64,000 bases of DNA from Heterodontus francisci (lineage: Eukaryota): contig NC_090411.1 in the NCBI RefSeq assembly GCF_036365525.1, positions 21,405,259-21,469,258 of the forward strand. The letters run 5' to 3'. The notes under the pieces are model-generated. The model saw only the letters and a program-made list of their open reading frames with translations. It made no database searches and was not told the origin of the DNA. Shown one piece after another: positions 7,394 to 25,914 of the stretch. The position numbers and the translations under genes were made by a program. Positions within the stretch are counted from its first letter, which is position 1, and each line of letters starts with the position of its first letter.

Positions 7394-7430
7394 ATGTGGC
7401 ATTTGCTGGCACTTGTTCTCCTGCAGAGCT
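7394..7430 (+). CDS. VJ-type Ig receptor exon 1 (signal peptide MWHLLALVLLQS)
   Basis: aacATG, hydrophobic leader, phase-1 donor gtgagt at 7431; joins exon 2 as ..QS-C-VHC. Confidence 0.85.
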
Positions 7431-7732
7431 GTGAGTTTTAAGCTGGATGTTTACACAAGTAGTAGATATGGTTCTGTTGCTGCTGCATATATTTAAATGA
7501 GAGTGTAATCCTTTTCGATTTATAACTGAACAAAACAGCAAAGGAAATCCTAATGATATTTCTAGAATCTTACTTGTCAACTCAAAAGAAGGAGGGCTGG
7601 CATTTATATAGTGTTTTACAGCCAATGAAGTGCTTTAAAAGTATAATCACTATTGTAATGTAGGAAATAATATGACCATTTTATATTGTACCTTCTTACT
7701 TTCATGATATTTTCTGCATTCAGTCCCTCTAG

Positions 7733-8095
7733 GTGTGCACTGTAGTTACCTGGTTTTGCAGCCTGTTGAATCCCAGTCAGTTCGACTGGGAGATACTGTG
7801 ACCCTGGCATGTTTCATTAACAGTCAGCCCTATATTGACTATACCAACGCATACTGGCTGAGGCAACAGGAAGGAAGAGCTCCTGTGGTTCTGGTGTATT
7901 CATTCCTCAACTCCAAGCAAGTCTTCCGCTCTGAACAGATTCCCAACAATGCATCCATGAAAATTACCCTTGATTACCAGAGTTTAAATTTAACCATACA
8001 GAGTGTCAATTCATCTGATGTTGGTCTTTACTTCTGTGCAGGCTGGCGATATGGGGTATTAGCCTTCGGAAATGGAACCAAATTGATCCTGACAG
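7733..8095 (+). CDS. VJ-type Ig receptor exon 2: germline-joined V-J Ig domain (NITR/TCR-like)
   Basis: Acceptor tccctctag; LGDTVTLAC, YWLRQQEGRAP, LTIQSVNSSDVGLYFC, FGNGTKLILT; phase-1 donor gtaaat. No RSS seen. Confidence 0.93.
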
Positions 8096-8674
8096 GTAAA
8101 TATTTGTATTTTATGGCAGGAGAAAATACTGACAATAAAATAAGGAAAGGCGCATCAAATATAAGTCTGCAATATTTGATCAAGTACCAGATTAGAGACT
8201 TGGGGAAAAGATAATGGCACATAGAAACTGGGGCCACATCAATAGAGAAGTGAAATAAAAACAGGAAGTGCTGGAAATACTCAGCAGGTCTGGCAGCATC
8301 TGTCGAGAGAGAAGCAGAGTTAACGTTTCAGGTCAGTGACCTTTCATCATTTTGCTGCTCTTCAATAGGGAAGTGGTTGAAAGGCAGAAAGCAAAGAGTA
8401 GGGTATAAAGAGGTTTCTCAGACTAGAAAGGCAACCCAGGGGAATCTGGGTTGAGGCTCTGTTTAAATATACTTAAATGATCTGGACTTGGAAGTTGAAT
8501 GAACAACATCAAAATTTGCTGCTGATGTCAATTTTAGGATTAGGGCAAATTATGAGATGGATTATGAAAAAGTGCAGGAGGTCAGAGGCTGGAAGAATGA
8601 GCAGATCGGCAGCAGTTGCAGTTTGATATAGTAAATTGTGAAATAACACATTTCGGGAATAAATAGGGAAAAAG

Positions 8675-9060
8675 GTCTCTTGTCCCCTACTTGAAGGGGC
8701 TGCTCTGTAACTTTTGGCTCCACTTTAGCTCACGCTCCTGATCTTTGGCCACCTGGTGTGGAGGAAGGGGGCAGGTAAGTTGGGCGACATTATCATGGGT
8801 GTGCTCCTGGGCCTGGCCAAAGGTGCAGACAGCACGCAGTCGAGGGAACTGCCTGTTCCAACTGCACTCCTCTCCTCTCTTGCACAGCTACATCCGCACT
8901 CGGGTGTCCCTGGCGAGGGAGCGTGTGGTGTCTGTTGGCATGCTTGAAGTTTTCCACGACAGCTGGGCACTGAATGGATTGTAAGGCATGATGGACTTGA
9001 CCAACGGCACTATAATTTGAGAAGTTTTGTTTTTCTTGGTTTTAGATTAGTGACTCAAAC
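8675..9060 (+). mobile_element. Tx1-type LINE 3' fragment
   Basis: LLIFGHLV..GVLLGLAK and YIRTRVSLARE..VFHDSWA resemble a Tx1 ORF2 C-terminus. Confidence 0.65.
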
Positions 9061-9562
9061 TGGACCTTGTTTTTGTTGGCTCACCCTTTAATGACAAAGG
9101 GGGCATCTCTACTCATTTGTTTCTGATTGGTGACACTAATTATCCCATGGAATAATCAAAAGGAGGAAGAATAGAAAATGGCAAGATTTTAAGTGGAGTG
9201 GAGAAGTAGCTGAATACAAAGCTTAGTAAAGGTGATAATACAAGTAAGTTAAGCCAGTAGAAACAGGACCACAGGAACAGGAAGAGGCCATTTAGCCCTA
9301 TGAGGCTGTTCCACCATTCAATGAGATCATGGCTGATCAACCTAACTCCATATACCTGCCTTTGCCCCATACCCCTCAATACCTTTGGTTAACAAAAATC
9401 TATCAACCTCCGTTGTAAAATTAACAATTGATCTAGCAACAATTGCCATTTTTGGAAGTGAGTTCCAAACTTCTATTATCCATTGTGTGTAAAAGTGTTT
9501 CCTAATTTTACTCCTGAAAAAGGCAAAGGGAACAATAGAATCAGAGGATACAACCTGCACTT

Positions 9563-9908
9563 TTTTTATTTTTATTTTATTTTATTTAGAGATACAGCAC
9601 TGAAACAGGCCCTTCGGCCCACCAGGTCTGTGCCGACCATCAACCACCCATTTATACTAATCCTACACTAATTCCATATTCCTACCACATCCCCACCTGT
9701 CCCTATATTTCCCTACCACCTACCTATACTAGGGGCAATTTATAACAGCCAATTTACCTACCAACCTGCAAGTCATTGGCATGTGGGAGGAAACCGGAGC
9801 ACCCGGAGGAAACCCACGCAGACACAGGGAGAACTTGCAAACTCCACACAGGCAGTACCCGGAATTGAACCCGGGTCGCTGGAGCTGTGAGGCTGCGGTG
9901 CTAACCAC
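9563..9908 (-). mobile_element. HE1-type tRNA-derived SINE
   Basis: Reverse complement of the SINE at 38031; A-rich tail. Confidence 0.85.
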
Positions 9909-9948
9909 TTGAAGGGAGGTAAATTCAAAATGAATCTGTGGAAACGTT

Positions 9949-10779
9949 GGCCTTGATATTAACCTGCCCCTCCCTCAACCCCTCTCCCCAGTGAGAGGCA
10001 GGTGAGGGCTGGGGGAATTTAAAAGTGAAAAATGAGGAACGCGACCACAACCCGCCATATACGCAACTGCTGCCATTTTCACGGCAGCAGATTTCATGTC
10101 ATGTGACTGTCCCAGTCTGGAGAGATGGGACATTTCATTAATAAACTCAACTCAGGCTCCCACTGTTCAACTGGGAGCCTGTTTTAAATTCTACAGCCAC
10201 TGCATGGGCTACCCAGGACTCAACCGACAGCAAAAGGGAAGTGGCAGCTACCAGCTCCCAAAGGGACGTGCTTTTTTACAGCCAGGAGGAATAGGAGTGC
10301 TTTTACTGGCTCCTCAGCTTTCTCTCTCTCTTTCCCTGCTGGGATTGCAGATCTCTTCCCAACTCCCCAAATTTCAATGTCCTCTCTATATCACAATCGC
10401 AGCTGACCTTCTGCTGCCCCAAGTACCGATTTCCGCCTCCCCCTCTCCCATAATGGTCTCTCTCTCCTCCCACCCCCAAGCACCAATCTCCGGCCTTCTA
10501 CCCTATTGCCTTCTTGCAATGTCCTCTCTCTCTCTCTCCCCTCCAGTCCCTAATCTCCTACCCTCACCTCCCTCCCAACTGTTGGGAACCATTCCTTCCT
10601 GCCCGGCAACCGGTCAGCCTAATCATTTGAACAACCGCCAGGGGCAAAACAGAAGAAAAGAATCATAATGAACTCCTGCCGTTAAATCTGGCACAGTCTC
10701 TGGGTCAACAGCCTCGACACGTTCCTGGCCATTTTCACCCTCCCAGAACTTTCCCCACCTCCCCTTAAATATTGAGGAC
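9949..10779. mobile_element. Non-autonomous DNA element (Harbinger-like) inserted in a CR1 tail
   Basis: Imperfect TIRs ggccttgatattaa / ttaaatattgaggac; CR1 3' sequence resumes on both sides. Confidence 0.55.
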
Positions 10780-11935
10780 ATTATTTCAGTAAGTGGTCAA
10801 TCTATGGAACAGACTCCCTAGGGAAATGGTGGAAGCAGTTACCATTGATGCATTCAAATACAAATTTGATAACTTTGTTTCAGAAAATAGCATTTTGGGA
10901 TACAGGTACATGACTCATTAGAGACAAGTGTGACATATGTTGCATGCTTGAGAGGATAAAGGTGACTTTGTGCCTACGCTTCCCAAATCTCTCAACCATA
11001 GAGGTTTTCTTTGTGTAATTTCTGGGTCTGTTGTACATTAATTGATAGAGATATTAATGATTGCCATGATTAGTCAACAACTCCATTATCTTCGTATCTC
11101 GAGACTGGCAGGATGGTAGAAGATAAACTGGATGGACTTTTTTCATCAAACAACTCCTATGAGTGGTCCTGTTAGTTGAATGTTTGTTTTGATCTAGTTG
11201 TTGCTTTTTCCAATTGATTGAAGTTAATGGGGCATTAGTGACTCATGTGACATCAGGGAAACATTTTTTAAAAGTTAAAGCTAAAGGGACTATATATAAT
11301 TGCACAAAGTATTTGCAACATAATAGCCCTTATGGAGATACAGTTGCAGAGTGAACAAGGCTGGGAAGTAAATATTCCAGGATGCTTGACTTTTAGAAGC
11401 AATTGGCAAAATGGAAAAGGGGAAGGGTAGCCCAGATAATAAAGGAAGGAATGAAGACAGTAGAGAGAAAGGATTTTAGCTCTGAAGAGCAAAAAGTAGG
11501 ACTAGTGTGGATGGAGTTAAGAAACAATTGGTGGGAGTAGTTTATAGGCACCTAAACAATGTGTCCTCTACCTTTTCTTTGTACTGGGTGGGCTACAAAT
11601 GCCTCTGAGCAAAACATTTTTGTCCATGGGCAGCTTACATTTTAAAAGACACTAAAATTTCACAAAGTTGTGAGCGGGCCTGTTTATTTCAATGCATGGT
11701 GCATTCCAGATTGCTGCCCAGCCGAGCACAGGCAAACCTGAGAGAAAATATTGCCCCTAACAGTAGTTGTAGTGTCAGGCAGAGTATAAATTAGGAAATT
11801 GGAGGTATATGTAACAAGATTAATACAGTAATCATTGGGAACTTTAATCTTCCTATAGACTGGGCAAACCAAATTTGCAGTAAATGTGTGGAGGAGGATT
11901 TCATGGAATGTATGCAAGCTAGTTTTCTATTGAGG

Positions 11936-13187
11936 AATTAGAATTAGAATTAGAATATTACAGCGCAGTACAGGCCCTTCGGCCCTCGATGTTGCGCCGA
12001 TCATCTGACCTACACTATTCCATTTACATCCATATGTCTATCCAATGACCACTTAAATGCCCTTAAAGTTGGCGAGTCTACTACTGTTGCAGGCAGGGCG
12101 TTCCACGCCCCTACTACTCTCTGCGTAAAGAAACTACCTCTGACATCTGTCCTATATCTTTCACCCCTCAACTTAAAGCTATGTCCCCTCGTGTTTGCCA
12201 TCCTCATCCGAGGAAAAAGACTCTCACTATCCACCCTATCTAACCCTCTGATTATCTTGTATGTCTCTATTAAGTCACCTCTCCTCCTCCTTCTCTCCAA
12301 CGAAAACAACGCCAAGTCCCTCAGCCTTTCCTCGTAAGACCTTCCTTCCATACCAGGCAACATCCTAGTAAATCTCCTCTGCACCCTTTCCAAAGCTTCG
12401 ACATCCTTCCTATAATGCGGTGACCAGAACTGCACGCAATACTCCAGGTGCGGCCTCACCAGAGTTTTGTACAGCTGCATCATGACCCCGTGGCTCTGAA
12501 ACTCGATCCCCCTACTAATAAAGGCTAACACACCATATGCCTTCTTAACAGCCCTATTAACCTGGGTAGCAACTTTCAGGGATTTATGTACCTGGATACC
12601 AAGATCTCTCTGTTCATCTACACTACCAAGAATCTTCCCATTAGCCCAGTACTCTGCATTGCTGTTACTCCTTCCAAAATGAATCACCTCACACTTCTCC
12701 GCATTAAACTCCATTTGCCATCTCTCAGCCCAGCTCTGCAGCCTATCTATGTCCCTCTGTACCCTACAACACCCTTCGACACTATCCACAACTCCACCGA
12801 CCTTCGTGTCATCCGCAAATTTACTAACCCACCCTTCTACACCCTCATCCAGGTCGTTTATAAAAATGACAAACAGCAGTGGCCCCAAAACAGAACCTTG
12901 CGGTACACCACTAGTAACTAAACTCCAGGATGAACATTTGCCATCAACCACCACCCTCTGTCTTCTTTCAGCTAGCCAATTTCTGATCCAAAGCTCTAAA
13001 TCACCTTCAACCCCATACTTGCATATTTTCTGCAATAGCCTACCGTGGGGAACCTTATCAAACGCCTTACTGAAATCCATATACACCACATCCACGGCTT
13101 TACCCTCATCCACCTGTTTGGTCACCTTCTCGAAAAACTCAATAAGGTTTGTGAGGCACGACCTACCTTTCACAAAACCGTGCTGAC
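11936..13187 (-). mobile_element. Young 5'-truncated CR1 LINE with an uninterrupted 387-aa RT ORF
   Basis: ORF 12010-13173 with YMDFSKAFDKVPH, GVPQGSVLGP, FADD; (ttagaa)n tail at about 11936-11956. Confidence 0.95.
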
Positions 13188-13902
13188 TAGGGAATCAACT
13201 AGGGAAGAGTTTATTTTAGATCTAGTATTATGCAATCAGAAAGGGTTAATTAATAACCTCTAAGGAAGAGTGATCATAATGTGATAGCATTTTATACAGT
13301 TCGAGTATGATATAGTTACGTCAGATGCTAAGGTCTTAAATCTGAGCAAAGTAAACTATGTAGGTATGAGGGGAGAGATGGTTAAGGTAGATTGGGAAGC
13401 TACATTAAATATATTAAATTAATATGACGGTAGATAAACAATGGTGTACGTTCATTGCAATAAATATACCCTTAAGGAATAAAAACCCCATGGTAACGGT
13501 GGTCCAACTGTGGTTAACAAAAATTTTTTACAGATAGGAAGTTCTTATAATGTTGTGAAAAAGAGTAGTAAACCTGAGGATTCGGAGGATTTTAGAATTC
13601 AACAAAGGAAGAGGAAGAAATTGATCATGAGAAAAGAGAATATGAGAGGAAACTATCAAGAGACATGCAAACAGATTGAAAAAGTTTCTATAGATATGCA
13701 AAAAGGAAGCGATTAGTAAAATTAAACGTGAGCCTGTTAGAGGCAGAGCCATGAGAAATTAGAATGGGGGATAAAGAAATGGCAGCCGCATTAAACAAAT
13801 ACTTTGTATCTGTCTTCATGGGAGAAAACACAAAAATAATTCTGGAAATAGTGGGGAATCAAGGGTCTAGCGAAAATGGGGAACCTAAAGAAATTAGCAT
13901 TA

Positions 13903-14274
13903 CAGTAAAGGCTTTGTTCTCCAGCATGTGCCAGACCTGAAAAGTGCCAGATAATCAAAAATTCCAGTTAATCAAGAGTCGTGCTTACCAAGGCAGGTGG
14001 AGATCCGACATTCCGTTCTGAAATTACCGCCGGAAAACCGAAGGATGCTGAGAACCCGGCATTGGGAAAGCCGATTTTTAATTTTTCCTTAACCCTTCGG
14101 GGTTGGTGCACCAATATAGTTGTAACATGCGTGAGAGTCAGCCCTTTTCAGAGAGCGTCATTAACTCATGCTGAGAACAATCGACTGCACTCAGGACAGC
14201 TTTGGGAGATTTTGGAAATTCTGGGGAATAGAGCTTGCTGGCAGCTAAAGTGCCAGATAACAAAGCTTTTACTG
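13903..14274. mobile_element. Tc1/mariner-type MITE
   Basis: TIRs CAGTAAAGGCTTTGTT / AACAAAGCTTTTACTG flanked by a TA TSD. Confidence 0.8.
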
Positions 14275-15462
14275 TAGTAAGGAAATAGTAATGGAAAAAT
14301 TCATGGGATTAAAAGTCAACAAATTACCTCAAGCTGACAACCTGCATCCTAGGGTGTTAAAACAGGTGGCTACAGAGATAGCATTGGTTTTGATTTTACG
14401 GAATTCCCTAGATTCTAGAATGGTCTCCATGGATTGAAAATTAGAAAATGTAGCCCCATTGTTTAAGGAGGGAGAGAGAACATAGGAACTATGGACCAGT
14501 TACCCCGACATCCACTTTGTTGGTATTATTAGAGAGGTGGTAACAGGACACTTAGAAAGTCATAACATGATGGCAGAGTCCATATGAATTTATGAAAGGG
14601 AAATTATGTTTGACAAATCTGTTAGTGTTTTTTGAGGTTGTAACTAGTAGGGGAGATAAGTGGGGAACAGTGGATCTATTATATTCGAATTTTCAAAAAA
14701 CATTCAATAAGATGCCACACGAGAGGTTATTAGACAGAATTAGGGCTCATGGGATTAGGGGTAATATATTAGCATGGATTGTGGATTGGTTAATGGACAG
14801 AGAACAGAAAGCAGGAATAAACAGGTCGGATTTCGGGTGCGCGGGGTACCAGTACTTGAGCTTCAGCTATTTGCAATTTATATCAATGCCTTGGCTGATA
14901 GGACCGAGTGTAATGTATCCAAGTTTGCTGATGATACAAAGTTAGGTGGAAAAGTAATCTGTGAGGAGGTGCAAAGAGGCTGTAAAAGGATTAAGGCAGG
15001 TTAAGTGAATGGACAAATATGTGGCAGATGGAATATAATGTGGAGAAATGTGAACTTATCCACTTTGGTAGTAAAAATAGAAAAGCAGAATATTTCTTAA
15101 ATGGTGATAGACTGGGGAATGTGGGCATTCAGAGGGACCTGATTGTCTATCTACATGAATCACAGAAAGTTAACATGCAGGTACAGCAAGCAATTAGGAA
15201 ATGGTATGTTAGCCTTTATTTCAAAGGGTTTGGAGTACAAGAGTGAAGAAGTCTTATTACAATTATGTAGGACCTTGTTAAGACTATACCTGGAGTACTG
15301 TATACAGTTTTGGTCTCCTTACCTAAGGAAAGATATACTTGCCTTAGAGGGAGTCCAACAAAGGTTCAGTAAACTGATTCCTGGGATGAGAGGATGGTTC
15401 TATGAGGAGAGATTGAGTAGACTAGGCCTATATTCCCTAGAGTTTAGAAGAATGAGAAGAAT

Positions 15463-15815
15463 GGGCGGCACAGTGGCGCAGTGGTTAGCACCGCAGCCTC
15501 ACAGCTCCAGGGACCCGGGTTCGATTCCGGGTACTGCCTGTGTGGAGTTTGCAAGTTCTCCCTGTGTCTGCGTGGGTTTCCTCCGGGTGCTCCGGTTTCC
15601 TCCCACAAGCCAAAAGACTTGCAGGTTGATAGGTAAATTGGCCATTATAAATTGTCACTAGTATAGGTAGGTGGTAGGGAAATATAGGGACAGGTGGGGA
15701 TGTTTGGTAGGAATATGGGATTAGTGTAGGATTAGTATAAATGGGTGGTTGATGTTCGGCACAGAAGGTGGGCCGAAGGGCCTGTTTCAGTGCTGTATCT
15801 CTAATCTAATCTAAT
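15463..15815 (+). mobile_element. HE1-type SINE
   Basis: tRNA-like A and B boxes (tggcgcagtgg, ggttcgattcc), V-SINE core, (ctaat)n tail. Confidence 0.9.
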
Positions 15816-16544
15816 CAATACATATAAACTTCTTAAAAGGTTTGACAGGGTAGATGCTGGAAGGATGTTTCCTCTGCCTGGGAAGTCTAGAACTAGGAGT
15901 AGAAGTCTCAGAATAAGGGATTGGTCATGTAGGATTGAGCTGAGGAGAAATTTCTTCACTCAAACGTTATGAATCTTTGGAATTCTGTACCCCAAAGAGC
16001 TGTGGATGCTCAGTCGTTGAATATATTCAAGACAGAGGTTGATAAACTTTTAGGGAATTAAGGTATATAGGAATAGTGTAGGAAGGTGGAGTTGTGGTAG
16101 ACGATTAGCCATGAATGGTGTTGTTGAATGGTGGAGCAGGCTCCAAGGGCCGAATGGTCTACTCCTACTGCTACTTATGTTCTTATGACTGCTCTCTGCA
16201 CACTTACTGTAACCCAAACCGCATTGTCAGATTACAGGAACTGATGGAGGTCCTGCACCGTTTACCCAACCAAATATAACTGACTTTTTTTCCAACGTGG
16301 AGATCGTATCAGTCAAGAGCTGAGAATACAGAGCAGATCAGTCCTCCCTTAAGATTAGTAATTCTAGGCTTACAATTTCAACCAAGAATTTGTGACTTTC
16401 TGGTAACAGTTCAGAATCTTCAATCAGAGATTGGACCTCATAGCTTGTAGCCTATCAGTAAACGGTGCATACTTAGCGAAACAATGCTTTGAGAAGTAAC
16501 AAGCAACAAAGACACAGTGGAGTAAAGCGATAAATGAAAGTACA

Positions 16545-16985
16545 AATGAAAAGAACAAAAACTGCAAAAGCTGGAAATTTGAAACAAAAACTGAAAATGC
16601 TGGAAATACACAGTAGGCCAGTCAGGAGAGAAAAGACAAATGAACATTTCAGTAGGACTCTGCTTCAAGAAAGGAAGAACTTGTATTGATATAGCACCTT
16701 TCACTTCCCTAAACCCTCCACAGCCAAGGAGGTATTTTTGACAAGTACTGGGGATGCTGGAAATCTAAAATAAAAATAGAAAATGTTGGAAATACTCAGC
16801 AGGTCTGGCAGCGTCTGAGGAGAGAGAGAAACAGAGAGTTAATGTTTCAGGTCAACGACTCTATGTCACAAGGTATTTCTGAAGCGTAGTTCCCTACTTA
16901 GCTTTACTCTGTGTTAACTTGCTTTTTCTCTCTACAGATGTTGTCTGGCTCTCCCAGTATCTCTAGCTGTTTTGATTCTTGTTTC
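16545..16985. mobile_element. Penelope-derived terminal fragments, partly an inverted pair
   Basis: The motif gctggaaatactcagcaggtctggcagc and its reverse complement; the same motif ends the GIY-YIG elements at 49.5 and 57-58.8 kb. Confidence 0.6.
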
Positions 16986-17599
16986 AAAGCGATAATTGAG
17001 ACGTGTATTTCAAAGGTCTCTATAGATTAATGTTAGAAAGTTGATGAAGGGCATCCAGAAACACTGCTCCTTAATGCTTTCTTGAGTTGATGTAGAACTT
17101 AACTGGTTTACGGTGATGTTTCTTCATCACTTCTTATTTCAATTTTAAATTTGTGACACTATTGTGCCCAAGATGGCAAAAGAACATGACCTAAAGGAGC
17201 CAAGATGCAGATTACTTTCTGTAGCTGATGCCTAAAAGTGACCTTCACCTTAGCTGAGATATTGAATTAAATGTAGCCTAGTAGATCGCTCCTAATTATT
17301 TCAGTTTTTCCATTCAGAACATAATCATAAATGTGGTGTAAGCTTGGCTCAGTAGCATCCTTCCCTCAAACGCGGTGTCACAAGGAAACATTTTTTACAC
17401 AGTGAGTTGTGAAAGGTTGGCTGAAAGGTTGGTTGGTGAAAGCAGATTCAGTAGTAACATTCAAAATACAATTGGATAAATAATTGCAGAGCTATGGGGA
17501 AAGAGCAGGGGAGTGGGATTAAGCTCTGCCAAAGAGCCGGCACAGGCACAATGGATTGAATGTGCTGTATCATTCTATGATTCTGTGATAATCTTGAAT

Positions 17600-18110
17600 T
17601 GTTCCAAAATTGCTGCCTGGATCCTAACGCGCACCAAGTCCCATTCACCCATTACCACTGTGCTTACTGACCTGCTTGCACTTCCAGTTAAGCAACGCCT
17701 CCGTTTTAAAGTACTCATCCTTGTTTTAAAATACTCCATGGCCTCTCCATCTTGATCTCTGTAACCTCCTCCACCCCCTACAACCCTCTGAGGTCTCTGT
17801 GCTCCACCAATTCTGCCTTCTTGCACATCCCTGATATTAATCGTGCACTTTTCATAGCCGTGTCTGCAGCTGCCTAGGCTCTTGGCTCTCGAATGCTCTC
17901 CCTAAACCTCTCCCCCTCTCTATCTATCTATCTCTGCTCCTTTAAGGTACTCCTCAAAATCCACCTCTTTGACTAAGCTTTTGGTCACCTATCCTCATAG
18001 TTCCTTATGTGGCTCAGTGTCAAATTTTGTTTGCTAGCTCTCTTCTGAAGCGACTTGGGACGTTTTATTACATTAAAGGTGCTATATAAATGCAAGTTGT
18101 TGTTGTTGCC
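17600..18110 (+). mobile_element. L2 LINE 3' end
   Basis: ccattcacccattaccactgtgc..ggtgctatataaatgcaagttgttgttgttg tail. Confidence 0.75.
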
Positions 18111-18482
18111 TCTGAGTCAGACGGTAGTAGCGTGAAGTCCCACTGGGCTTGAGTGCATAATCCAGGCAGACAGTTCAGTGCAGCACTTTGAAAGAGTGCC
18201 ATCTTTCACATGTGGTGTTAAACTAAGATGTCAAATATCCCTTTGCACGATTGAAGATTGAAGTCCTGGCCAGTGTTTATTGCACCAAACAATACTACCA
18301 AAAATAGGTCACTTATCACATTTATGTGTGTGTGTCCTTGCTGTGCACAGTTTAGCTGGCCTCTTTCTCTGCATTACAACAGTGACGACACATCAAAAAA
18401 GGCTCAAATGGACTCTGAAGAGCTTTGGAATATTCCAAGTTAGTGAAAGGATCCATATAAATGAAAGTTCTTTCTTTTCTTG
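18110..18482 (+). mobile_element. Deu-domain (SacSINE-like) SINE
   Basis: Similar to 46230-46600; cagtgcagcact..gtgccatctttc core. Confidence 0.55.
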
Positions 18483-18670
18483 AAGGTTAAGCTATTGTTA
18501 AGATTATGGTAAGGTTAAAGTGAGATTATGGTAAGGTTAAGGGAAGTTTATGATAAGGTTAAGGTGATATTATGGTAAGGCAAAAGAAGGTTATGATAAT
18601 GGTTAAGGTATAGCTTAAGGTAAGGTTATGGTTATGGTCATGTTCAGGTAGGGTTTTGGTAAGGTTGTGA
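18483..18670. repeat. Degenerate minisatellite (ttatggtaaggttaa-like)
   Basis: Repeated ggtaaggtta/ttatg units. Confidence 0.8.
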
Positions 18671-19436
18671 ATGTCACCAAGACCTAAACAGGGCTGATGG
18701 CACAAATACTAAAAACAAGGCTTAAACATCTCCTAACCCCGAACCTCAAGTGGAGTGGCTGCTTCCAGAATCTCTGACTGCCCAGATTGGTAACTTCATC
18801 TGCATGTCAAGGATCCATAAAGAACCAAAAACAGAAGCTGGGAGAAGCACAGCAGACCAGTCGGGGCCAGAGAAACTGACGGATGAACGATTTGGGTGTT
18901 GCCCCTTCAGTTTAGGGTTAGGGTCTACAAGAGAAATCACAACGTGTATAATCTCTGTTCAGATGTTGGGTTTGCTGTATGTTTTCTGCGTCTCTATTGA
19001 TCTGTGGACTCCTCTGATCGATTTCAGACAATGGACAGACAGAGCTACCTCTCGCTCGCTGTAAAGTTTTAAAGTTAGAGATGGAATTGATACTGGTGCA
19101 AGTATGAATTCCGGTGGCGAGATTAGGGTCCAATGAACAATGTTAGAACCTCCAGTGGGACAAATGGTTCGATTGCATCAAAGTCTTTCTCCAAGTTGTA
19201 GCCCGTTTGAACTACTTGTTCTTTGCTGGTTCCCCGGGCACCCTAAAACAAAAAGTTTTCTGCCGCTGTCTCGGAGACAGTGAAGGCCGAGGAGAAATAA
19301 ACTCAGTAGGCATCTGATGTGGTGAAGTTTGGTAAAAGGTTTTTTTTTGGTTAAGAGTCTGGATATTAATTGCTAGCAGTCTGGGGCTTTTCACCCTCCC
19401 CCGGGGGTATCTGATGGGATTGTGTTTGGATTTCAG

Positions 19437-19604
19437 GAGTTGGCTCCTCTGAAGACTCCAGTGTTGCCCCATCTCCGACCAGTAGCTCTCAGTGCCCGGA
19501 CTGCAGCTCACTGGCCTCCGGCTCTATTTATTTCATGGTCCTGACTGCAATTTCGCTGCTGTTGCTGCTGGCGGCGGTGCTGTATGTCAGGCAGCTCAAA
19601 AAAG
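19437..19604 (+). CDS. VJ-type Ig receptor exon 3: stalk and transmembrane
   Basis: Acceptor tttggatttcag, phase 1/1; GVGSSEDSSVAPSPTSSSQCPDCSSLASGSIYFMVLTAISLLLLLAAVLYVRQLKK; donor gtgcgt. Confidence 0.85.
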
Positions 19605-20191
19605 GTGCGTTCTGACTCTCATTGTATTTTTGCTCTTTAAGTAAGTCTGAATGTGTAAATGCAAAGATAGTGCAATGTGATCTGGGAGCTTTTATTGCAA
19701 ATACTAACTCTAAATGGCAATGGTCAAGGAGGCGGAGAAATTGACATCTGCTCTTGTCCTTAAATCTGAGCAGAGAGAGAGAACTGTTTGCAACTTCAGT
19801 CCAGACCACTCCACCCAGGCTGTTTTTTCTTTTAAAACTGTTAAAAACCGATCCTGGTGAACGGTGCAGGGAGAGCGCATGGTCCGGGGGCGATTTTAAC
19901 CTGGGCTCGGCGGAGCGGGGAGCCCGGCGCTGCCGGAAGACGAATTGGGCGGATTTTAACTGCCGGGTTTCCACCGATTGCAATATGATTGGCGGAGCGG
20001 CCGACCCATCGCGTCGACATTCCGCCCGCCCACCTTTTCCGCGCAATTTCCGGCGGCAGCCCCGACCCAGGATATTTAAAGGGTGAATGCGCCGCTGCTT
20101 TCGCCGAATTTCAACGTTGCTTTCTGTTCGCATCTGCTGTGGCGCGGCCCGGGGTAGGGTAGGGGGGTGGTGGCGGTGGTGGGAGGGGGAC

Positions 20192-20431
20192 ATGGCTACG
20201 AGGAGGGGGAAAGTTGCCCGCAGGTTTTCAGACACCTCCCTGGAGGTGCTGGTGGCAGCAGTCAGAGGCAGAGGCAAAGTGCTCTTCCCTCCAACTGGGA
20301 AGAAGGTGCACAGCAGTCTGTCAAAGAAAGCCTGGCTGGAAGTGGCAGAGGAAGTCAGCAGACTGAGTATCACCCCGAGGACCTGGATCCAGTGCAGGAA
20401 GAGATTCAATGATCTCACACGGTCAGCCAGG
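20192..20431 (+). CDS. Harbinger-derived Myb/SANT-like (NAIF1/MSANTD-like) gene, exon 1
   Basis: gacATGG; RFSDTSLEVLV..KKAWLEVAEEVS..RTWIQCRKRFNDL; phase-0 donor gtgagt; CpG-rich region upstream (19850-20190). Confidence 0.85.
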
Positions 20432-20629
20432 GTGAGTAAAGCTTCTCCTCTTCCCATCTGTTGCATTGCAATAAAAGTCACAATCCCTCCCCTCCACCTT
20501 ACAGCATGCAGACCTCTGACAGCCCCTGAAGCATGCCCCTGGCACTGTTTCTGCCTCTCCTGCTCACTCCTAACACGCACTGACCCTGCTGCTTGCTGCC
20601 TTCCTTCACCACATGCCTTTCTCATCTAG

Positions 20630-20970
20630 GTGCATGCACAGGCCATTCAGCCCCTCGACTCTCAGTGAGATCATGGCTGACCTGTACTTTAACTCCATCC
20701 ACTTGGCTCCATATTCCCTCATTCCCCTTGACAAGCAAAAAAAAAATCAGTCAGATTTAAAACGATTAATTGAGCCAGCATCCACTGCTTCTTGTGGGAG
20801 AGAATTCCACACTTCTACCATGTGACAAAGTGTTTCCTGAGTGGCCTGGCTCTGATTTTAAGGTTATGTCCCCTCATCCCAGACTCCCCCACCAGGAGAA
20901 AAACTTTCTGTCCATCAAACCCATCAATTCCTTTCAAATTCCTAAAAGAAAAACTTCAATCAAATCTGCG
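20630..20970 (-). mobile_element. CR1 3' tail inside intron 1 of the Myb/SANT gene
   Basis: ggccattcagcccctcg..gatcatggctga..gagaattccacacttc; decayed. Confidence 0.75.
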
Positions 20971-21151
20971 GTAAGTGGCTGAACCTGCGACTCTCTTCAT
21001 GACTCCTTCCTTAATTGACAATTATGACAATCCCATTGCTTAGCATCTTGCCTCTTCCCTCTCTCAGCTGATGCACTTGCAGAAACTTCAAACTTGGACA
21101 CCTGGCTTCTTGGCAGCCACTGATAACTCTCGCTCTCTCTTTGTTTTGCAG

Positions 21152-21311
21152 GAGAAGGCAGCGCACAATATGAGGGAAAGAAACAAGATTGGCGGGGGAA
21201 CAGCTGATATCGTAGCTCTCAGCCAGGTGGAGCAAGCTGCAATGGAAATAAGTGGGACATCCAGGGCAATCAGCATTGGAGACGGCGAGGCTGGCGGATT
21301 CTCCAAGCACA
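21152..21311 (+). CDS. Myb/SANT-like gene, exon 2
   Basis: Acceptor ctttgttttgcag; EKAAHNMRERNKIGGG..IGDGEAG, typical of Harbinger Myb proteins; phase-1 donor gtgact. Confidence 0.8.
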
Positions 21312-21479
21312 GTGACTGCTTTCCAGTCCTACCCATTCATGTACCACAAGTGATTACAACCAACTTCAAAATCTCAGCCAGTATGGTCAAGCCTCCTCAT
21401 GTCCGCATTCCAGCCATTCATGTGAGAATTCCGGCCTTTCATTCAAACCTGATTCTTGCCTTTTTATTTTCCCCTGCAG

Positions 21480-22573
21480 GCCCACCTGAGCCGCAACAAC
21501 CTCCTCAAGAAGCTTTTGAAGAGGACACGGTGGAGTCGGACAGCCCTCCGGAGGGAGTACAGTCAGTTGCTGCATCCCTCCAAAGCAGCAATGCAGAGAT
21601 TCCTGCCCCAGATCGGGAAGAAAGTGAATTGGAGAGGCCCGTGCCTGATGAAACACACAGCCAAAGAGATCAGGAGCAGGATCAGGAGCAGGAACAGGAA
21701 CGGGAACAGGAACAGCAGCAGGAACAGGAACAGGATCAGGAGCAGGAGCAGGCACTGGTGGTAGGGACAGGCCAGGAGGTGTCTCGCCGGAGGGCCATGT
21801 CCTCTCCTAGCTCTGCTGAGTGGGACAGAGATACAGACCTCCGTGATCCGGCAATAAAAAGGAAAATGCTTGAGGCGCACCACCGACTCTATGAGGTTTT
21901 GGAGGGCCTGCCAAAGACTTTGAGCGCCATGTCTGAAAGTATGGAGGAGTCTACTTCCGCCATGTGTGGAGTTGTGTCGCACGTGGTTTCCACTTTGCAA
22001 ACTACCCTGGAAAGCACGACCACCTCCAGGGACACTATGGCCGAGCCCTCTCAGCAGGAGTCCGCCTCACCAACCATTGAGGCTTTGATAGGAGCTCAAA
22101 CGGCGACCATCCAGACGCTGGGCTCCAATGTTTGTTCCACCTTGGAGCGACTGGTGTGCCAGATGGATAGTCTGGTGGGTCACGTGGACAGGGGCTTTCA
22201 AAGGGTCACCCATCTCCTGCAGTCTGCTCTCCCTCAGATCAGTGGGAGTGAGGAGACAAAGCCCCACGGGAGCAATGGTAGCGCTACAGGACAGGCAAGT
22301 GTCACCCTTGTTCATAAGGCCTTTGCTCTCTCACCACCCCCTCAACCAATGCCTGCCATGGTGCCTAATAACCAGTTGGGCCTGACCGCCCTGGCAGCAG
22401 CCAAGGTGCTCCAATCTGTGGCCGTGCCCTTGCGGGCCCGAGCTCCCAGAGGTCAAAGGCCACGAGCAACTCAAGGATCCCAGGATCAACCGCAACAGCC
22501 TACCACCACCTGCTCAGCTGTGGCCACTGGGGGAGCATCTCGTAGAAGTAGCAAAGTGAGTAAACCTTTTTAA
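21480..22573 (+). CDS. Myb/SANT-like gene, exon 3 (acidic QE repeat, helical region, low-complexity tail)
   Basis: Acceptor ttttattttcccctgcag; open to TAA at 22571-22573 with AATAAA immediately after. Spliced CDS 1494 nt (497 aa). Confidence 0.8.
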
Positions 22574-23718
22574 AAATAAAAGTCACTTATGGGTTGATGC
22601 TCGGGTGTTGAACGTATGATTTGATGCAAATGATTGTGTTCAGCTGTACGTTTAAAAACTTCATCACCTCCACCACTTTGGTGTGCAGGATGTTTTATGG
22701 AGCAACTCTCGATTTGCTTGGTCATTATGGGCTGTTCCTGCTGGGTTTGGGTGGGAATCAGCCTTGCTTCATTTAAACGAGACCCGGCAGATACAATCAG
22801 CTTGGCCTCACTCCAGCTTCTACGTGATGCCTTGAGTTGGGGATGCTACAAACCAATCCTGCACCAGGATTACAATGCAACCCCCCCCCCCCCCCCCCCC
22901 CACCCACCCCAACACCAAATCTCGGCTGCTATAACTGCATCTGGTCATGACATTTTATACAGGGTTTGCAAATGCTTTTGGAGCATTCTGTATGTAAATG
23001 TAAATCTATTATAGCTTTAATGTTAAAGGTATCAGATTCTACACTACGTAGAGTAGTGGGAACAACTGTTGTAACATATTAAGCAGAAATTGCTGCAATT
23101 GCACAGCAGGTCCAACAGGCTAAGGTTTCTGACTGGGATCCTTCATCAGACCTCTTACCCAATCCCACCAGACCTTTCGTAGTATTATCCAGCATAGAAA
23201 TGGCTGTTTGCCCCATTGTCTCTGTACAAGCTCGTCAGTGGACCTCTGCCCTGTCCCATCAGAGCCTTTACCCTGTCCCGTCAGTGGCTCACCTTTCTCT
23301 TTCAGATCCTAACTGAGTTTCTGTCATTTGCTGTTTCTGTTTTAGATCTCTTTAGCTCCATCTTCCAAATATTTAATACTAATTGGGCTTCAGTTCAATG
23401 TTAATAACAGAACATTTTCAAAATTGAATGAGAGTGTTTGATTGCTGTGAGTTCCCTTGTGAAGAGGACAGGATTCTGAGCTCCAGTTACCACAGGACAG
23501 TGTATTTTGAGAAACCCTAATAGGCCAGGAAAGTTCAGCCCTCTGTTTCTCTCTCCCACCAATGCTGCCTGACCTGCTGAGTATTTCCAGCATTTTCTCC
23601 TTTAATTTCAGATTTCCTGCACCTGCAGTGTTTTGCTCTTGTGTTGAGGTTGAGCTGAGTTCGTTTCTGTTCATCCCATTTCTCCCTCTTACAAATCCTC
23701 CTTATTTAAATCCATCAG

Positions 23719-23780
23719 GTTGGGCTCTCGCATTGACTGGGAAGCAGGTGTCAACAAATAGAAGCGCAACGCCCAGCGAG
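23719..23780 (+). CDS. VJ-type Ig receptor exon 4 (cytoplasmic)
   Basis: Acceptor tccatcag, phase 1 in and 0 out; GWALALTGKQVSTNRSATPSE; donor gtaaga. Confidence 0.75.
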
Positions 23781-24627
23781 GTAAGAAGTAACTTGCAACA
23801 ACAACACTTCGCATTTGTATAGCATCTTAACACATCCTCTGGAGGTTGCAAAGCACTTTACAAGTAATGGATTACTTTGGAATTGCAGCCATTGTTGTTA
23901 AATAAGCTGCACACAGCAAGGCACACAAATAAATGTCATACTAATTAATTCGGTGCCATGTGACTTTTAACAGTCACTGGACCAGAAATGTACATGTTAA
24001 CTTCAGCAGGTTAGAGTGTATCCCTGTGACTGCTGGTCTGTGCTTTCAGGCATCGATAACATGTCAATCAGCCAGCTCGGGCAGGAATCTAAATGTAACA
24101 GCATGATAAACTGTTTAATGAAATGAGTTCTGCACTTTAACCATGACCGAGACGCTAGGAAAAATTATCTGGTTGGAGATTTTAACATTTTAGATTGCTA
24201 GTAAATCCAGATTAATAACTAGCTCCATGAGCTAGCCAGTTTTTAAAATGTTTAGCTCTTACACCATAACGTTACAATAATAAAGCGACTCAAGTTTTTT
24301 TTAATATGCAACTAAAATACAAAATTAAAAACAATTTTACATTTAAAAATAGAAACAGTGGCATCGATATATATGGAGAGGGAGAGCGGCAGGATAGTGG
24401 GGGGGAGGTTTTTCTGCTTTGTTTTTGGGGAAAAACGGGTTTCCCCCAGGTTCTGCCGAATTTAACCCACCCCTCCCCACCCAATGTATCGATGTTTCTC
24501 TGCTCCTTCCTTTATAGAGTGGAAGACCACTAGCCTACAAGCACAGAAGTGGCCTCTGCATCAACTTGCCCTAACTTCCTATTTCTTCCATGTTAAATAA
24601 ATGATGCTTATCTTCTTCTCTATTCAG

Positions 24628-24744
24628 AATCATCCAGTGGAAGAGACCCATTATGCCTCTGTGAATTTATCTCCAATAACAAATCCAAAACCAAGAGTGG
24701 CGTGTGAAATGGTGTATGCAGAGGTCAGGCAGGATGCCCTGTAA
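24628..24744 (+). CDS. VJ-type Ig receptor exon 5: tail with ITSM-like and ITIM-like motifs
   Basis: Acceptor tcttcttctctattcag, phase 0; NHPVEETHYASVNLSPITNPKPRVACEMVYAEVRQDAL*. Total CDS 747 nt in frame. Candidate AATAAA at about 25667. Confidence 0.87.
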   Translation, partial: NHPVEETHYASVNLSPITNPKPRVACEMVYAEVRQDAL

Positions 24745-25914
24745 AGAATGCTCATCACCAACCAGTACCAAACAGAATACAACGAAAGCATTTCACCAAC
24801 TTTACTCTGTTTTTCAAAGGTCTTAACATTGTCTTGGCGGAGGTTAAAATGATGCTGAGCAGGAGATGATTGACTGGCTAGGAAATGCTGAAGATCCCCT
24901 GATGGTAGGTGCAGTGCGCAGTGCAAGTTGGCTCATTCAGGCCAGCAAGGTTTCCAGCTTCAATCCCCAGCCTGTGCTGGTGGGGCTTGGGCTCTACAAG
25001 GACTGATCCTAATATTCCTGTTCTTGGGAGGGGAAAATCGGCGAACAGTTCCCACTCCTGATTGCTAGTGAGTCGTTTTCTGCTGGAAGCTGCATGCATG
25101 CTAATATCAATCATGGAATTAGACTTGGCTGGAACAGTCCCCAGCAGTCAAATTGCCTTTGAGAATCTGCTACTTAACCTCACGCATGCAATGCAGCCGT
25201 TTGGTTGAGGGCCTGCCTGGCAGTATCTGGTGCCCATCATGAGGTGGTGGGTTAGGTTTTCAACTTGCCACCTGGGCAGGGTTTTAGAGTGAGTGGCACA
25301 TCTGCAATGCTGGCTTCAACCCTGGGTGGCAAATTGAAAATCTACCCAGTCTCTTCACCCAGCAAGGGACAGCACCTTCAGTTACAGAGAAAATGAAAGA
25401 ATGCAGAAAAAAAAATGGTCAGAAAATGTAAAGAAACATGGTGATGTAGAAAGGTGAATGTTCCATTTTCATTTGGGAAGGATAATTTGAACAAGTTTGT
25501 AAAGTTAAATTACTGATGCAAACCCAGGAATTTTATATCTATATATATCTTTTTTTTTAAAGTTCAGAAATGTATTTTGGTTACTTATTCATGATTAGTT
25601 TCATATTATGGGATGTACAGCTGTGGAGTTTGATTAGAACTGTAGAGTAGATTGTGTCCTGAGTAAAATAAAACAAATCCCATTGATACTTTGGGTGTTA
25701 AGTACCTGTTCTTCAAGGTTATGGTGATGGGACGGAGAAATCAATGTTCAGATTCCAGCACTCTCAGGGGGACTGCTTCTTGCACATACTGAACAAATCA
25801 AGAAGGACACTGAACAATTATGCTAACTAAGATGCATCGCCTATTAATCAGTCCAACACAAGTCAAAGGTCAGCAGTGAATAAGTACCTTCTATTGACCA
25901 ATCCAGCAGCCATT

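What the first reader, a model, noticed from the sequence alone, without database searches (positions are those of the whole stretch)
19850..22580. Intact Harbinger-derived Myb/SANT gene nested in an immune receptor intron: candidate new domestication
Seen: CpG-rich upstream region, three exons, 497 codons with no stop or frameshift, and a poly(A) signal. No adjacent transposase and no clear right TIR. Intron 1 holds a decayed CR1 tail, so the locus looks old, and the other Harbinger ORFs in the window are all broken. Known: NAIF1 and MSANTD genes are domesticated Harbinger Myb proteins. Inference: kept by selection as a host gene, with its own promoter only about 250-600 bp downstream of the receptor TM exon.
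Basis: partly seen in the sequence, partly recalled or inferred. Interest (0 to 1): 0.8.

Follow-up and report, generated by a model that had tools for sequence, protein, structure and literature searches.

The report
Shark Myb gene sharing receptor's exons
A conserved, expressed shark gene for a Myb-type DNA-binding protein sits inside an intron of an immune receptor gene and finishes its message on the receptor's own last two exons, read in another frame.

Summary
The window matches Heterodontus francisci. The four exon translations are exact pieces of RefSeq XP_067875575.1 (520 aa, misnamed 'histone-lysine N-methyltransferase 2D-like'). Spliced contigs of 4 of 4 public runs join 20431>21152, 21380>21480, 22555>23719 and 23780>24628.

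The Myb gene therefore has a CpG-island start and three private exons. It then splices into the receptor's last two exons, where it stops after five codons (VGLSH*) in a frame other than the receptor's.

One ortholog each was found in 11 shark species of both shark superorders. Their tree follows the species tree. Of 18 listed coding differences to a second Heterodontus-like source, 13 are silent. It is a host gene under purifying selection.

Harbinger descent is plausible (Myb_DNA-bind_5 domain, as in NAIF1/MSANTD) but was not shown. The gene belongs to a shark-and-ray paralog family with the same build. No TIRs, transposase or second copy were found. I found no paper describing the locus. 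The scan noted this stretch before (s1-873813).

The parts
19850..20191 (+). CpG island directly upstream of the start codon, the likely promoter and 5' UTR. It holds GATTTTAAC at 19892 and 19952.
   Evidence: GC 0.637 and CpG o/e 1.09. Motif positions. No contig depth at 19620-19819 in 4 of 4 runs, but depth at 19820-20019 in X5 and X6. The transcription start itself was not mapped.
20192..20431 (+). Coding exon 1: 80 codons, Myb/SANT-like DNA-binding domain.
   Evidence: Pfam PF13873, E 1.6e-9. Exact match to residues 1-80 of P0012. Joint 20431>21152, GT..AG, in 4 of 4 runs.
20432..21151 (+). Intron 1, with a decayed LINE ORF2 tail in antisense (about 20662-20970).
   Evidence: High summed contig depth at 20620-21019 marks a repeat.
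21152..21380 (+). Coding exon 2 (229 nt, ends in phase 1).
Evidence: Exact match to P0012 residues 81-156. Joint 21380>21480 in 4 of 4 runs.
21480..22555 (+). Coding exon 3: acidic Q/E repeat linker, conserved two-helix C-terminal domain, basic tail.
   Evidence: Exact match to P0012 residues 158-515. Helices 280-341 and 354-406 with pLDDT 76-80. Joint 22555>23719 in 4 of 4 runs.
22556..23718 (+). Intron 3 of the Myb gene.
23719..23780 (+). Exon shared by both genes. In the Myb frame it reads VGLSH then stop (TGA 23734-23736). In the receptor frame it reads (G)WALALTGKQVSTNRSATPSE.
   Evidence: Joints 22555>23719 (4 of 4 runs) and 19604>23719 (X1 and X2) both enter it, and 23780>24628 leaves it (4 of 4 runs). 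tblastn of the Heptranchias receptor matches it.
24628..25400 (+). Shared last exon. It carries the receptor's tail with the tyrosine motifs (stop TAA 24742-24744) and the common 3' UTR, which runs past 25400.
   Evidence: (contigs run over the end of the laid stretch).
19437..19604 (+). Stalk and transmembrane exon of the host receptor gene. RefSeq isoform X2 of the Myb gene starts inside it (MSGSSKK, 19584-19604, other frame).
   Evidence: Joint 19604>23719 in X1 and X2.
7394..8095 (+). Leader exon (7394-7430) and V-type Ig exon (7733-8095) of the host receptor gene.
   Evidence: tblastn with the Heptranchias, Mustelus and Mobula receptor proteins gives 58-67% identity.

Best explanation
This is a single-copy host gene of sharks. 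It encodes a 520-residue protein with three features: an N-terminal Myb/SANT-like (trihelix-type) DNA-binding domain, a disordered acidic linker, and a conserved C-terminal pair of long helices.

The gene lies on the sense strand in intron 3 of a five-exon V-type Ig receptor gene whose tail carries tyrosine motifs. It starts at its own CpG island and has three private exons. It then splices into the receptor's last two exons.

In the first of those exons it is read one frame off from the receptor and stops after five codons. The stop lies 44 nt before the last exon junction, which by the usual 50-55 nt rule should spare the mRNA from nonsense-mediated decay (established knowledge, inferred here). 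The two unrelated proteins therefore share a splice acceptor, an 18-nt dual-coding stretch, the 3' UTR and the poly(A) site.

Shown here: the exon structure, the shared exons, presence in transcript-like contigs, one ortholog per shark species, and purifying selection.

Inferred: the protein is a sequence-specific DNA-binding regulator that pairs or recruits partners through its helical domain. The gene descends, directly or through an older domesticated paralog, from the Myb-like gene of a Harbinger transposon that landed in the intron before living sharks diverged and lost its own terminator to the host's exons.
For: - **Exon structure:** the four exon translations are exact substrings of P0012 = XP_067875575.1.
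- **Splicing:** GT..AG joints 20431>21152, 21380>21480, 22555>23719 and 23780>24628 appear in 4 of 4 runs from 2 studies. The receptor joint 19604>23719 appears in 2 of 4 runs. One 1560-nt contig carries exons 1-3 plus 30 nt of the shared exon (table 8).
- **Orthologs:** one search gave 11 hits from 10 shark species, one gene per species. One search added Cetorhinus, making 11 species. Both Galeomorphii and Squalomorphii are represented.
- **Shared C-terminus:** 8 of 9 full-length orthologs seen, and both Heterodontus isoforms, end in VG[LF]SH. The Rhincodon entry reads into the intron instead.
- **Shared exon elsewhere:** the Heptranchias receptor's exon starts GRALALT, which in the other frame can read VGLSH-stop. 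Receptor and Myb orthologs sit on contigs of the same length in Heptranchias (20256265) and in Mustelus (81969703).
- **Tree:** the 10 orthologs form one clade (SH-aLRT 100) in species-tree order.
- **Selection:** 13 silent against 5 replacement changes among 18 listed differences, with 369 silent and 1191 replacement sites. That gives a ratio of about 0.12, binomial P 1.8e-5. If all 8 unlisted differences were replacements, P is 0.003.
- **Domain-wise identity to other sharks:** Myb region 81-91%, helical domain 70-89%, linker 33-62%.
- **Domain:** Myb_DNA-bind_5 above the curated cut-off. The model gives pLDDT about 90 or more for residues 14-92.
Against: - The runs are only guessed to be RNA and are kept as contigs, so starts, ends, strand and levels are not shown.
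- Copy number in the genome was not measured. Only the annotated proteome and the contigs speak for a single copy.
- No ortholog was listed for Scyliorhinus or for any ray.
- Harbinger descent was not tested against transposon-borne Myb-like proteins.
- Fold matches to Myb-type domains are weak (E 0.13-0.5).
- The C-terminal domain matches no Pfam family, no solved structure and no Atlas cluster at a useful score.
Confidence: 0.8

Rival explanations
1. The gene did not come straight from a transposon insertion at this site. It is a duplicate of an older host gene of the same build (Myb domain plus two-helix domain) that was copied into the receptor intron. On this view there was no new domestication event here, only a relocation within an existing shark-and-ray gene family.
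For: - A profile search found 236 relatives at E 0.001 or better, 16 of them at 1e-30 or better.
- All 20 looked up are from sharks or rays.
- Several match both the Myb and the C-terminal part: P0028, P0029, P0031, P0032, P0036, P0038.
- Group B (sharks plus rays, SH-aLRT 100) looks like another one-per-species gene.
- In the tree the orthologs nest inside this family.
Against: - The tree has no transposon-borne or non-elasmobranch outgroup and is rooted at the midpoint only.
- The nearest sister rows have long branches.
- The family itself may be a set of separate domestications of one transposon lineage, as proposed for MSANTD genes (PMC9392472, passages).
- Intron positions of the paralogs could not be compared.
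Confidence: 0.4
2. It is simply the Myb-like ORF of a Harbinger element copy that happens to be still open: a transposon remnant, not a host gene.
For: - The domain family is the one carried by Harbinger Myb-like proteins.
- Harbinger remains lie in the same window.
- A 23-nt, 83% inverted pair (19949-19971 and 22779-22801) brackets exons 1-3.
Against: - There is no second copy in the window.
- There is one ortholog per species in 11 sharks, in species-tree order.
- Silent changes are in excess.
- Splicing into host exons is conserved, as shown by the common VG[LF]SH end.
- No transposase lies beside it.
- The inverted pair is one of 11 such pairs in 4.1 kb and may be chance.
Confidence: 0.03
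3. The main role of the nested unit is at RNA level. Its exon 2 acceptor traps transcripts that start at the receptor promoter and so yields a receptor cut off after the membrane span, without the tyrosine-motif tail. On this view the Myb protein is secondary.
For: - RefSeq isoform X2 (P0001) starts with MSGSSKK. That is 19584-19604 inside the TM exon, joined to exon 2 at 21152.
- Read in the receptor's frame, that joint would meet a stop after about 20 codons of exon 2. This is my own reading of the sequence, not a tool result.
Against: - The joint 19604>21152 is not among the 15 joints listed (3 more were not shown), while 19604>23719 is.
- Strong conservation of the Myb and helical domains and the excess of silent changes show that the protein itself is under selection.
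- In X5 and X6, Myb contigs are present with no listed receptor joint.
Confidence: 0.1

Closest known systems
[quoted passage not shown] 2022, PMC9392472; abstract and passages read)
   Same: - Myb/SANT-like trihelix domain as the only recognised domain.
- No transposase or TIRs.
- One copy per species.
- Negative selection.
   Different: - Found here only in sharks, not from cartilaginous fishes to mammals.
- It has a conserved two-helix C-terminal domain shared with shark and ray paralogs.
- It is nested in another gene and ends on that gene's exons.
- Descent from a transposon was not tested here.
MYPOP (p42POP), named as a putative further Harbinger-derived gene in the discussion of PMC9392472
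   Same: RefSeq names several paralogs of this family 'myb-related transcription factor, partner of profilin-like'. Both have an N-terminal Myb-like domain followed by a helical region (the latter recalled for MYPOP).
   Different: No MYPOP sequence was compared here. The names come from an automatic pipeline. Orthology to MYPOP is untested.
CDKN2A (INK4a/ARF): two promoters and first exons joined to a common exon read in two frames (recalled, no call)
   Same: Separate promoters and private 5' exons. A common downstream exon is translated in two frames for two unrelated proteins. The 3' UTR is shared.
   Different: Only five codons plus the stop of the Myb protein lie in the common exon. The private part here is a whole three-exon gene inside an intron and is probably of transposon origin.
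Host-transposase fusion genes formed by transposase capture (Cosby et al., bioRxiv 10.1101/2020.05.07.082677; search listing and start of abstract only)
   Same: A transposon-type DNA-binding domain inside a host gene becomes joined to host exons by splicing.
   Different: Here the host supplies only the 3' end (five out-of-frame codons, UTR, poly(A) site), not a protein domain. The promoter is the nested gene's own.

Membership tests
Myb/SANT-like DNA-binding domain, Pfam PF13873 (Myb_DNA-bind_5) | Match to the family profile above its curated score | tested here: met
   38 bits against a cut-off of 21.7, E 1.6e-9, profile positions 3-73 of 78. 37 bits on the full protein.
Myb/SANT-like DNA-binding domain, Pfam PF13873 (Myb_DNA-bind_5) | Three-helix Myb-type fold | tested here: inconclusive
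   The model has helices 14-26, 41-58 and 65-92 at pLDDT about 90. Foldseek gives only weak matches to NgTRF, Sap1 and Zeste DNA-binding domains (E 0.13-0.5, TM by target 0.6-0.7).
Domesticated Harbinger Myb-like genes (NAIF1/MSANTD kind) | [quoted passage not shown] | not tested
   No transposon-borne Myb-like protein set was at hand, and the supplements of PMC9179366 and PMC9392472 are closed. The window's own fragments at 55747-56044 and 54739-54849 are 31-45% identical over 66 residues or fewer.
Domesticated Harbinger Myb-like genes (NAIF1/MSANTD kind) | Single copy with orthologs at the same place in related species | tested here: inconclusive
   One gene per species in 11 sharks and a species-tree-like clade. 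No ortholog DNA was seen (closed). Genome-wide copy number was not measured.
Domesticated Harbinger Myb-like genes (NAIF1/MSANTD kind) | Purifying selection on the coding sequence | tested here: met
   13 silent against 5 replacement changes among 18 of 26 differences to organism B, P 1.8e-5, worst case P 0.003. Domain-wise conservation.
Domesticated Harbinger Myb-like genes (NAIF1/MSANTD kind) | Loss of transposon ends and of the partner transposase | tested here: met
   No DDE_Tnp_4 near the gene (5 stop-free pieces of the window scanned). Only short, chance-level inverted pairs.
Autonomous Harbinger transposon | TIRs, 3-bp target duplication, adjacent DDE transposase gene, many copies | tested here: not met
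   Target duplication and genome copy number were not testable here.
Two genes with a common exon read in two frames (INK4a/ARF kind) | Two different upstream exons spliced to one acceptor, and the common exon translated in different frames | tested here: met
   Joints 19604>23719 and 22555>23719. The Myb frame gives VGLSH-stop and the receptor frame gives WALALTGKQ.... RefSeq proteins of both kinds end accordingly.
Host-transposase fusion protein | Transposon-derived domain joined in frame to a host protein domain | tested here: not met
   The Myb reading frame takes only five codons from the host exon, out of the host's frame. In isoform X2 the receptor exon supplies seven codons in a non-receptor frame.

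The most novel reading that the evidence does not exclude
The Myb gene and the receptor gene are a coupled pair kept together in sharks for more than 200 million years (age recalled). A transposon-derived DNA-binding protein captured the receptor's terminal exons. It now controls, or is controlled with, the receptor. For example, it could bind the GATTTTAAC repeats in its own CpG island inside the receptor's intron. That binding could set whether receptor transcripts run through to the inhibitory tail or are cut short at the nested gene.
Probability: 0.1. Interest if true: 0.8.

Novelty: new variant of a known kind. Interest (0 to 1): 0.55.

Why it matters
Domesticated Harbinger Myb-like genes known so far (NAIF1, MSANTD1-4) date to the base of jawed vertebrates, and how they were captured can no longer be seen. 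This locus is a lineage-restricted case in which the capture is still legible. The gene keeps its own promoter and three exons but has handed termination to the host gene, and the two share a dual-coding exon in all sharks sampled. That gives a concrete model for how an intronic transposon gene becomes a stable host gene. It also raises a testable link between a DNA-binding factor and an inhibitory immune receptor. Finally, it flags two misleading RefSeq names and a receptor that seems not to be annotated as a protein of its own in H. francisci.

Tried and rejected
- **Second copy in the window:** blastn of 19600-23100 against the window found only the intron-1 repeat.
- **TIR search:** one search gave 11 short inverted pairs. 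The only suggestive one is 19949-19971 with 22779-22801. I treat it as a lead, not as ends.
- **Mustelus receptor tail:** its odd C-terminus resembles the translated CpG island only weakly (13 of 32, E 0.059). This is not used as evidence.
- **C-terminal domain:** nothing in Pfam, nothing in PDB by sequence (best E 0.25), nothing by Foldseek, and no Atlas score of 0.9 or more. No family could be named.
- **Earlier findings:** look-ups by words and by sequence gave no other copy in this genome.
- **dN/dS across deep orthologs:** not possible, because no ortholog DNA could be fetched.
- **Literature:** no paper in the held library has Harbinger, Myb and elasmobranch together. Searches listed none on this locus. 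Supplements were closed and not asked for. Those of PMC9179366 and PMC9392472 hold transposon Myb-like proteins that would bear on the origin.
- **Joined model:** my spliced model was not searched. Exons were handled apart, and full-length searches used the stored RefSeq protein P0012.
Full report
**What is there**

The stretch 19850-22580 holds a CpG island (19850-20191: GC 0.637, CpG o/e 1.09, against 0.35 for the whole window). It is followed by an open reading frame in pieces.

Exon 1 (20192-20431) encodes 80 residues that match Pfam Myb_DNA-bind_5 at E 1.6e-9, 38 bits against a cut-off of 21.7. AATAAA follows at 22575. No second copy of the locus lies in the window. Only a repeat in intron 1 recurs, at 9318-9503 with 68% identity.

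**The real gene model**

A search with the continuous frame 21152-22570 returned 11 proteins from 10 shark species, one gene per species. The cluster of the best hit holds a 520-residue RefSeq protein of Heterodontus francisci, XP_067875575.1 (P0012).

The translations of 20192-20431, 21152-21380, 21480-22555 and 23719-23736 are exact substrings of it, in that order. So the window matches H. francisci, and the gene has four coding exons. Two things follow:

- The exon 2 donor is at 21380, not 21311.
- Exon 3 ends at 22555 with the donor AAA|GTGAGT.

I did not search my own joined model. Exons were handled apart, and full-length work used the stored protein P0012.

**The last exons belong to the receptor**

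The fourth coding exon (23719-23780) reads VGLSH then stop in the Myb frame. It also has a donor at 23781.

Read in phase 1 from the receptor's transmembrane exon (19437-19604), the same exon gives (G)WALALTGKQVSTNRSATPSE. It continues into 24628-24744, which encodes the tail with the tyrosine motifs HYASV and VYAEV.

tblastn with the Heptranchias receptor protein P0024 lays its parts on the V exon (67%), the TM exon (57%), this exon, and the last exon (77%). The leader exon (7394-7430) was placed only by a weak match of the Mobula receptor P0027 (E 4.7) and by reading. The Myb gene thus sits, on the same strand, in the 4114-nt intron 3 of a five-exon receptor gene and uses that gene's last two exons.

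**Transcript evidence**

Seven small runs from two studies hold parts of the stretch. Their kind is only guessed as RNA. I laid four of the seven (X1 and X2 of organism A, X5 and X6 of organism B) on 19420-25400.

All four hold contigs with GT..AG joints at these places:

- 20431>21152
- 21380>21480
- 22555>23719
- 23780>24628

X1 and X2 also hold 19604>23719, the receptor's own splice over the nested gene.

One X1 contig of 1560 nt carries exons 1-3 and 30 letters of the shared exon. Contigs break about 30 letters into the shared exon, as expected where two upstream exons meet one acceptor in an assembly graph.

That intron-less forms of two genes stand in runs of about 150 million letters makes cDNA by far the likeliest source. 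This is an inference. Contigs cannot give starts, ends, strand or levels.

No contig lies on 19620-19819 in any run, while X5 and X6 have some on 19820-20019. That fits a start in the CpG island.

The joint TM exon>exon 2, implied by RefSeq isoform X2 (P0001, which starts MSGSSKK = 19584-19604 in a non-receptor frame), is not among the 15 joints listed. Three more joints were not shown.

**Conservation**

With Cetorhinus, orthologs are on record for 11 shark species: Heterodontus, Carcharodon, Cetorhinus, Mustelus, Heptranchias, Pristiophorus, Rhincodon, Stegostoma, two Chiloscyllium and Hemiscyllium. They span both Galeomorphii and Squalomorphii.

Of the nine full-length orthologs outside Heterodontus that I read, eight end in VG[LF]SH.

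In a tree of 32 family members the 10 orthologs form one clade (SH-aLRT 100), with the two squalomorphs at the base of that clade under the midpoint root, then Heterodontus, then lamniforms plus Mustelus and the orectolobiforms.

Identity to the Heterodontus protein, by region:

| Region | Identity |
|---|---|
| Myb region (1-116) | 81-91% |
| Helical domain (273-410) | 70-89% |
| Linker | 33-62% |

**Selection**

Organism B's contigs differ from the window at 26 of 1500 coding letters (table 8). Eighteen of the 26 are listed. Of these, 13 are silent and 5 change the residue, on 369 silent and 1191 replacement sites. That gives a ratio of about 0.12, P 1.8e-5. If all eight unlisted differences changed residues, P would still be 0.003.

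All six listed differences in exons 1 and 2 are silent. Organism B also lacks 36 letters, in frame, in the Q/E repeat (21683-21718).

**Nesting in other sharks**

- The receptor search gave four proteins: Heptranchias, Mustelus and two rays.
- The Heptranchias receptor's exon begins GRALALT, which in the other frame can read VGLSH-stop.
- Receptor and Myb orthologs are on contigs of equal length in Heptranchias and in Mustelus.
- The ray receptors read GWPRTLP and GWPCTRP at that place.
- No ray protein fell in the ortholog group among the 20 relatives whose source I looked up.
- No H. francisci receptor protein was returned. The receptor may not be annotated there as a protein of its own.

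**Family and origin**

A profile of eight orthologs, run against 1.84 billion representatives, found 236 proteins at E 0.001 or better, and 16 at 1e-30 or better. All 20 that I looked up are from sharks or rays.

Several share both the Myb domain and the C-terminal helical part. RefSeq calls some of them 'myb-related transcription factor, partner of profilin-like'. One further group is named NAIF1 in Carcharodon.

The published record is as follows:

- NAIF1 and MSANTD1-4 are derived from Harbinger Myb-like genes.
- MYPOP, ZSCAN20, PRDM11 and TSNARE1 are named as further candidates (PMC9392472, passages).
- Transposon Myb-like proteins are similar only in parts of the domain (PMC9179366, passages).

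So a Harbinger origin is reasonable for the whole family. I did not test it. Whether this gene came from a fresh insertion or from a copy of an older host paralog stays open.

The window's own Harbinger remains are distant or far away: a DDE_Tnp_4 piece at 62831-63160, and Myb-like pieces at 55747-56044 and 54739-54849.

**Structure and likely working**

The model is confident for the Myb domain (residues 14-92, pLDDT about 90). It is fair (pLDDT 76-80) for two long helices, 280-341 and 354-406. The rest is predicted disordered.

Foldseek gave only weak matches, all to Myb-type DNA-binding domains. Sequence search of solved structures and the Atlas gave nothing usable.

I therefore read the protein as a DNA-binding factor with a helical pairing domain. 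This is an inference.

**Verdict**

The core of the interpretation (a selected host gene with its own promoter in the receptor intron) holds.

I found no paper on this locus. The scan had noted the same stretch before (s1-873813).

Noticed in passing
window 23420-23619: A short repeat in intron 3 has summed contig word depths of 53,000-81,000 in all four runs, with hundreds of loose ends at 23562 and 23595-23598. It is an extremely abundant element in the transcript contigs. It forms an inverted pair with 23081-23112.
   Followed up: no
window 19892, 19952 and 22779-22801: GATTTTAAC occurs twice, 60 nt apart, in the CpG island. It occurs only once more on the + strand of the window (24178). 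A similar copy in inverted orientation lies after the read-through stop. The Mustelus receptor protein P0025 ends in a tail with SDFNQ twice, which could be the same motif translated.
   Followed up: partly
window 21683-21718 and 25047: Two length differences between sources. Organism B lacks 36 letters, in frame, in the Q/E repeat. X1 and X2 lack 20 letters of the 3' UTR that the window has.
   Followed up: no
window 7394-24744: No H. francisci protein was returned for the receptor's V exon (4 hits: Heptranchias, Mustelus and two rays). Yet its spliced form is in the contigs. The receptor may be hidden in RefSeq as the untranslated 5' part of the Myb gene's isoform X2.
   Followed up: partly
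proteins P0012 and P0001: The RefSeq names 'histone-lysine N-methyltransferase 2D-like' and 'ataxin-2 homolog' fit nothing in the protein. The only Pfam domain is Myb/SANT-like. The names probably come from the Q/E-rich low-complexity stretch.
   Followed up: partly
window 62831-63160: A broken Harbinger-type transposase piece: DDE_Tnp_4, E 1.9e-6, 110 residues between stops. Distant Myb-like fragments lie at 55747-56044 (+) and 54739-54849 (-).
   Followed up: partly
window 12010-13173 (-): An open 387-residue reverse-transcriptase ORF of a LINE lies in the receptor's large second intron. Further RT pieces are at 14571-15658, and a long RT-like ORF set at 39227-42645 (-).
   Followed up: no
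protein P0205 (Heptranchias perlo): A 362-residue protein with a Myb domain 52% identical to this gene's. Its precomputed Pfam hits are PF05903 together with PF13873, an unusual pairing.
   Followed up: no
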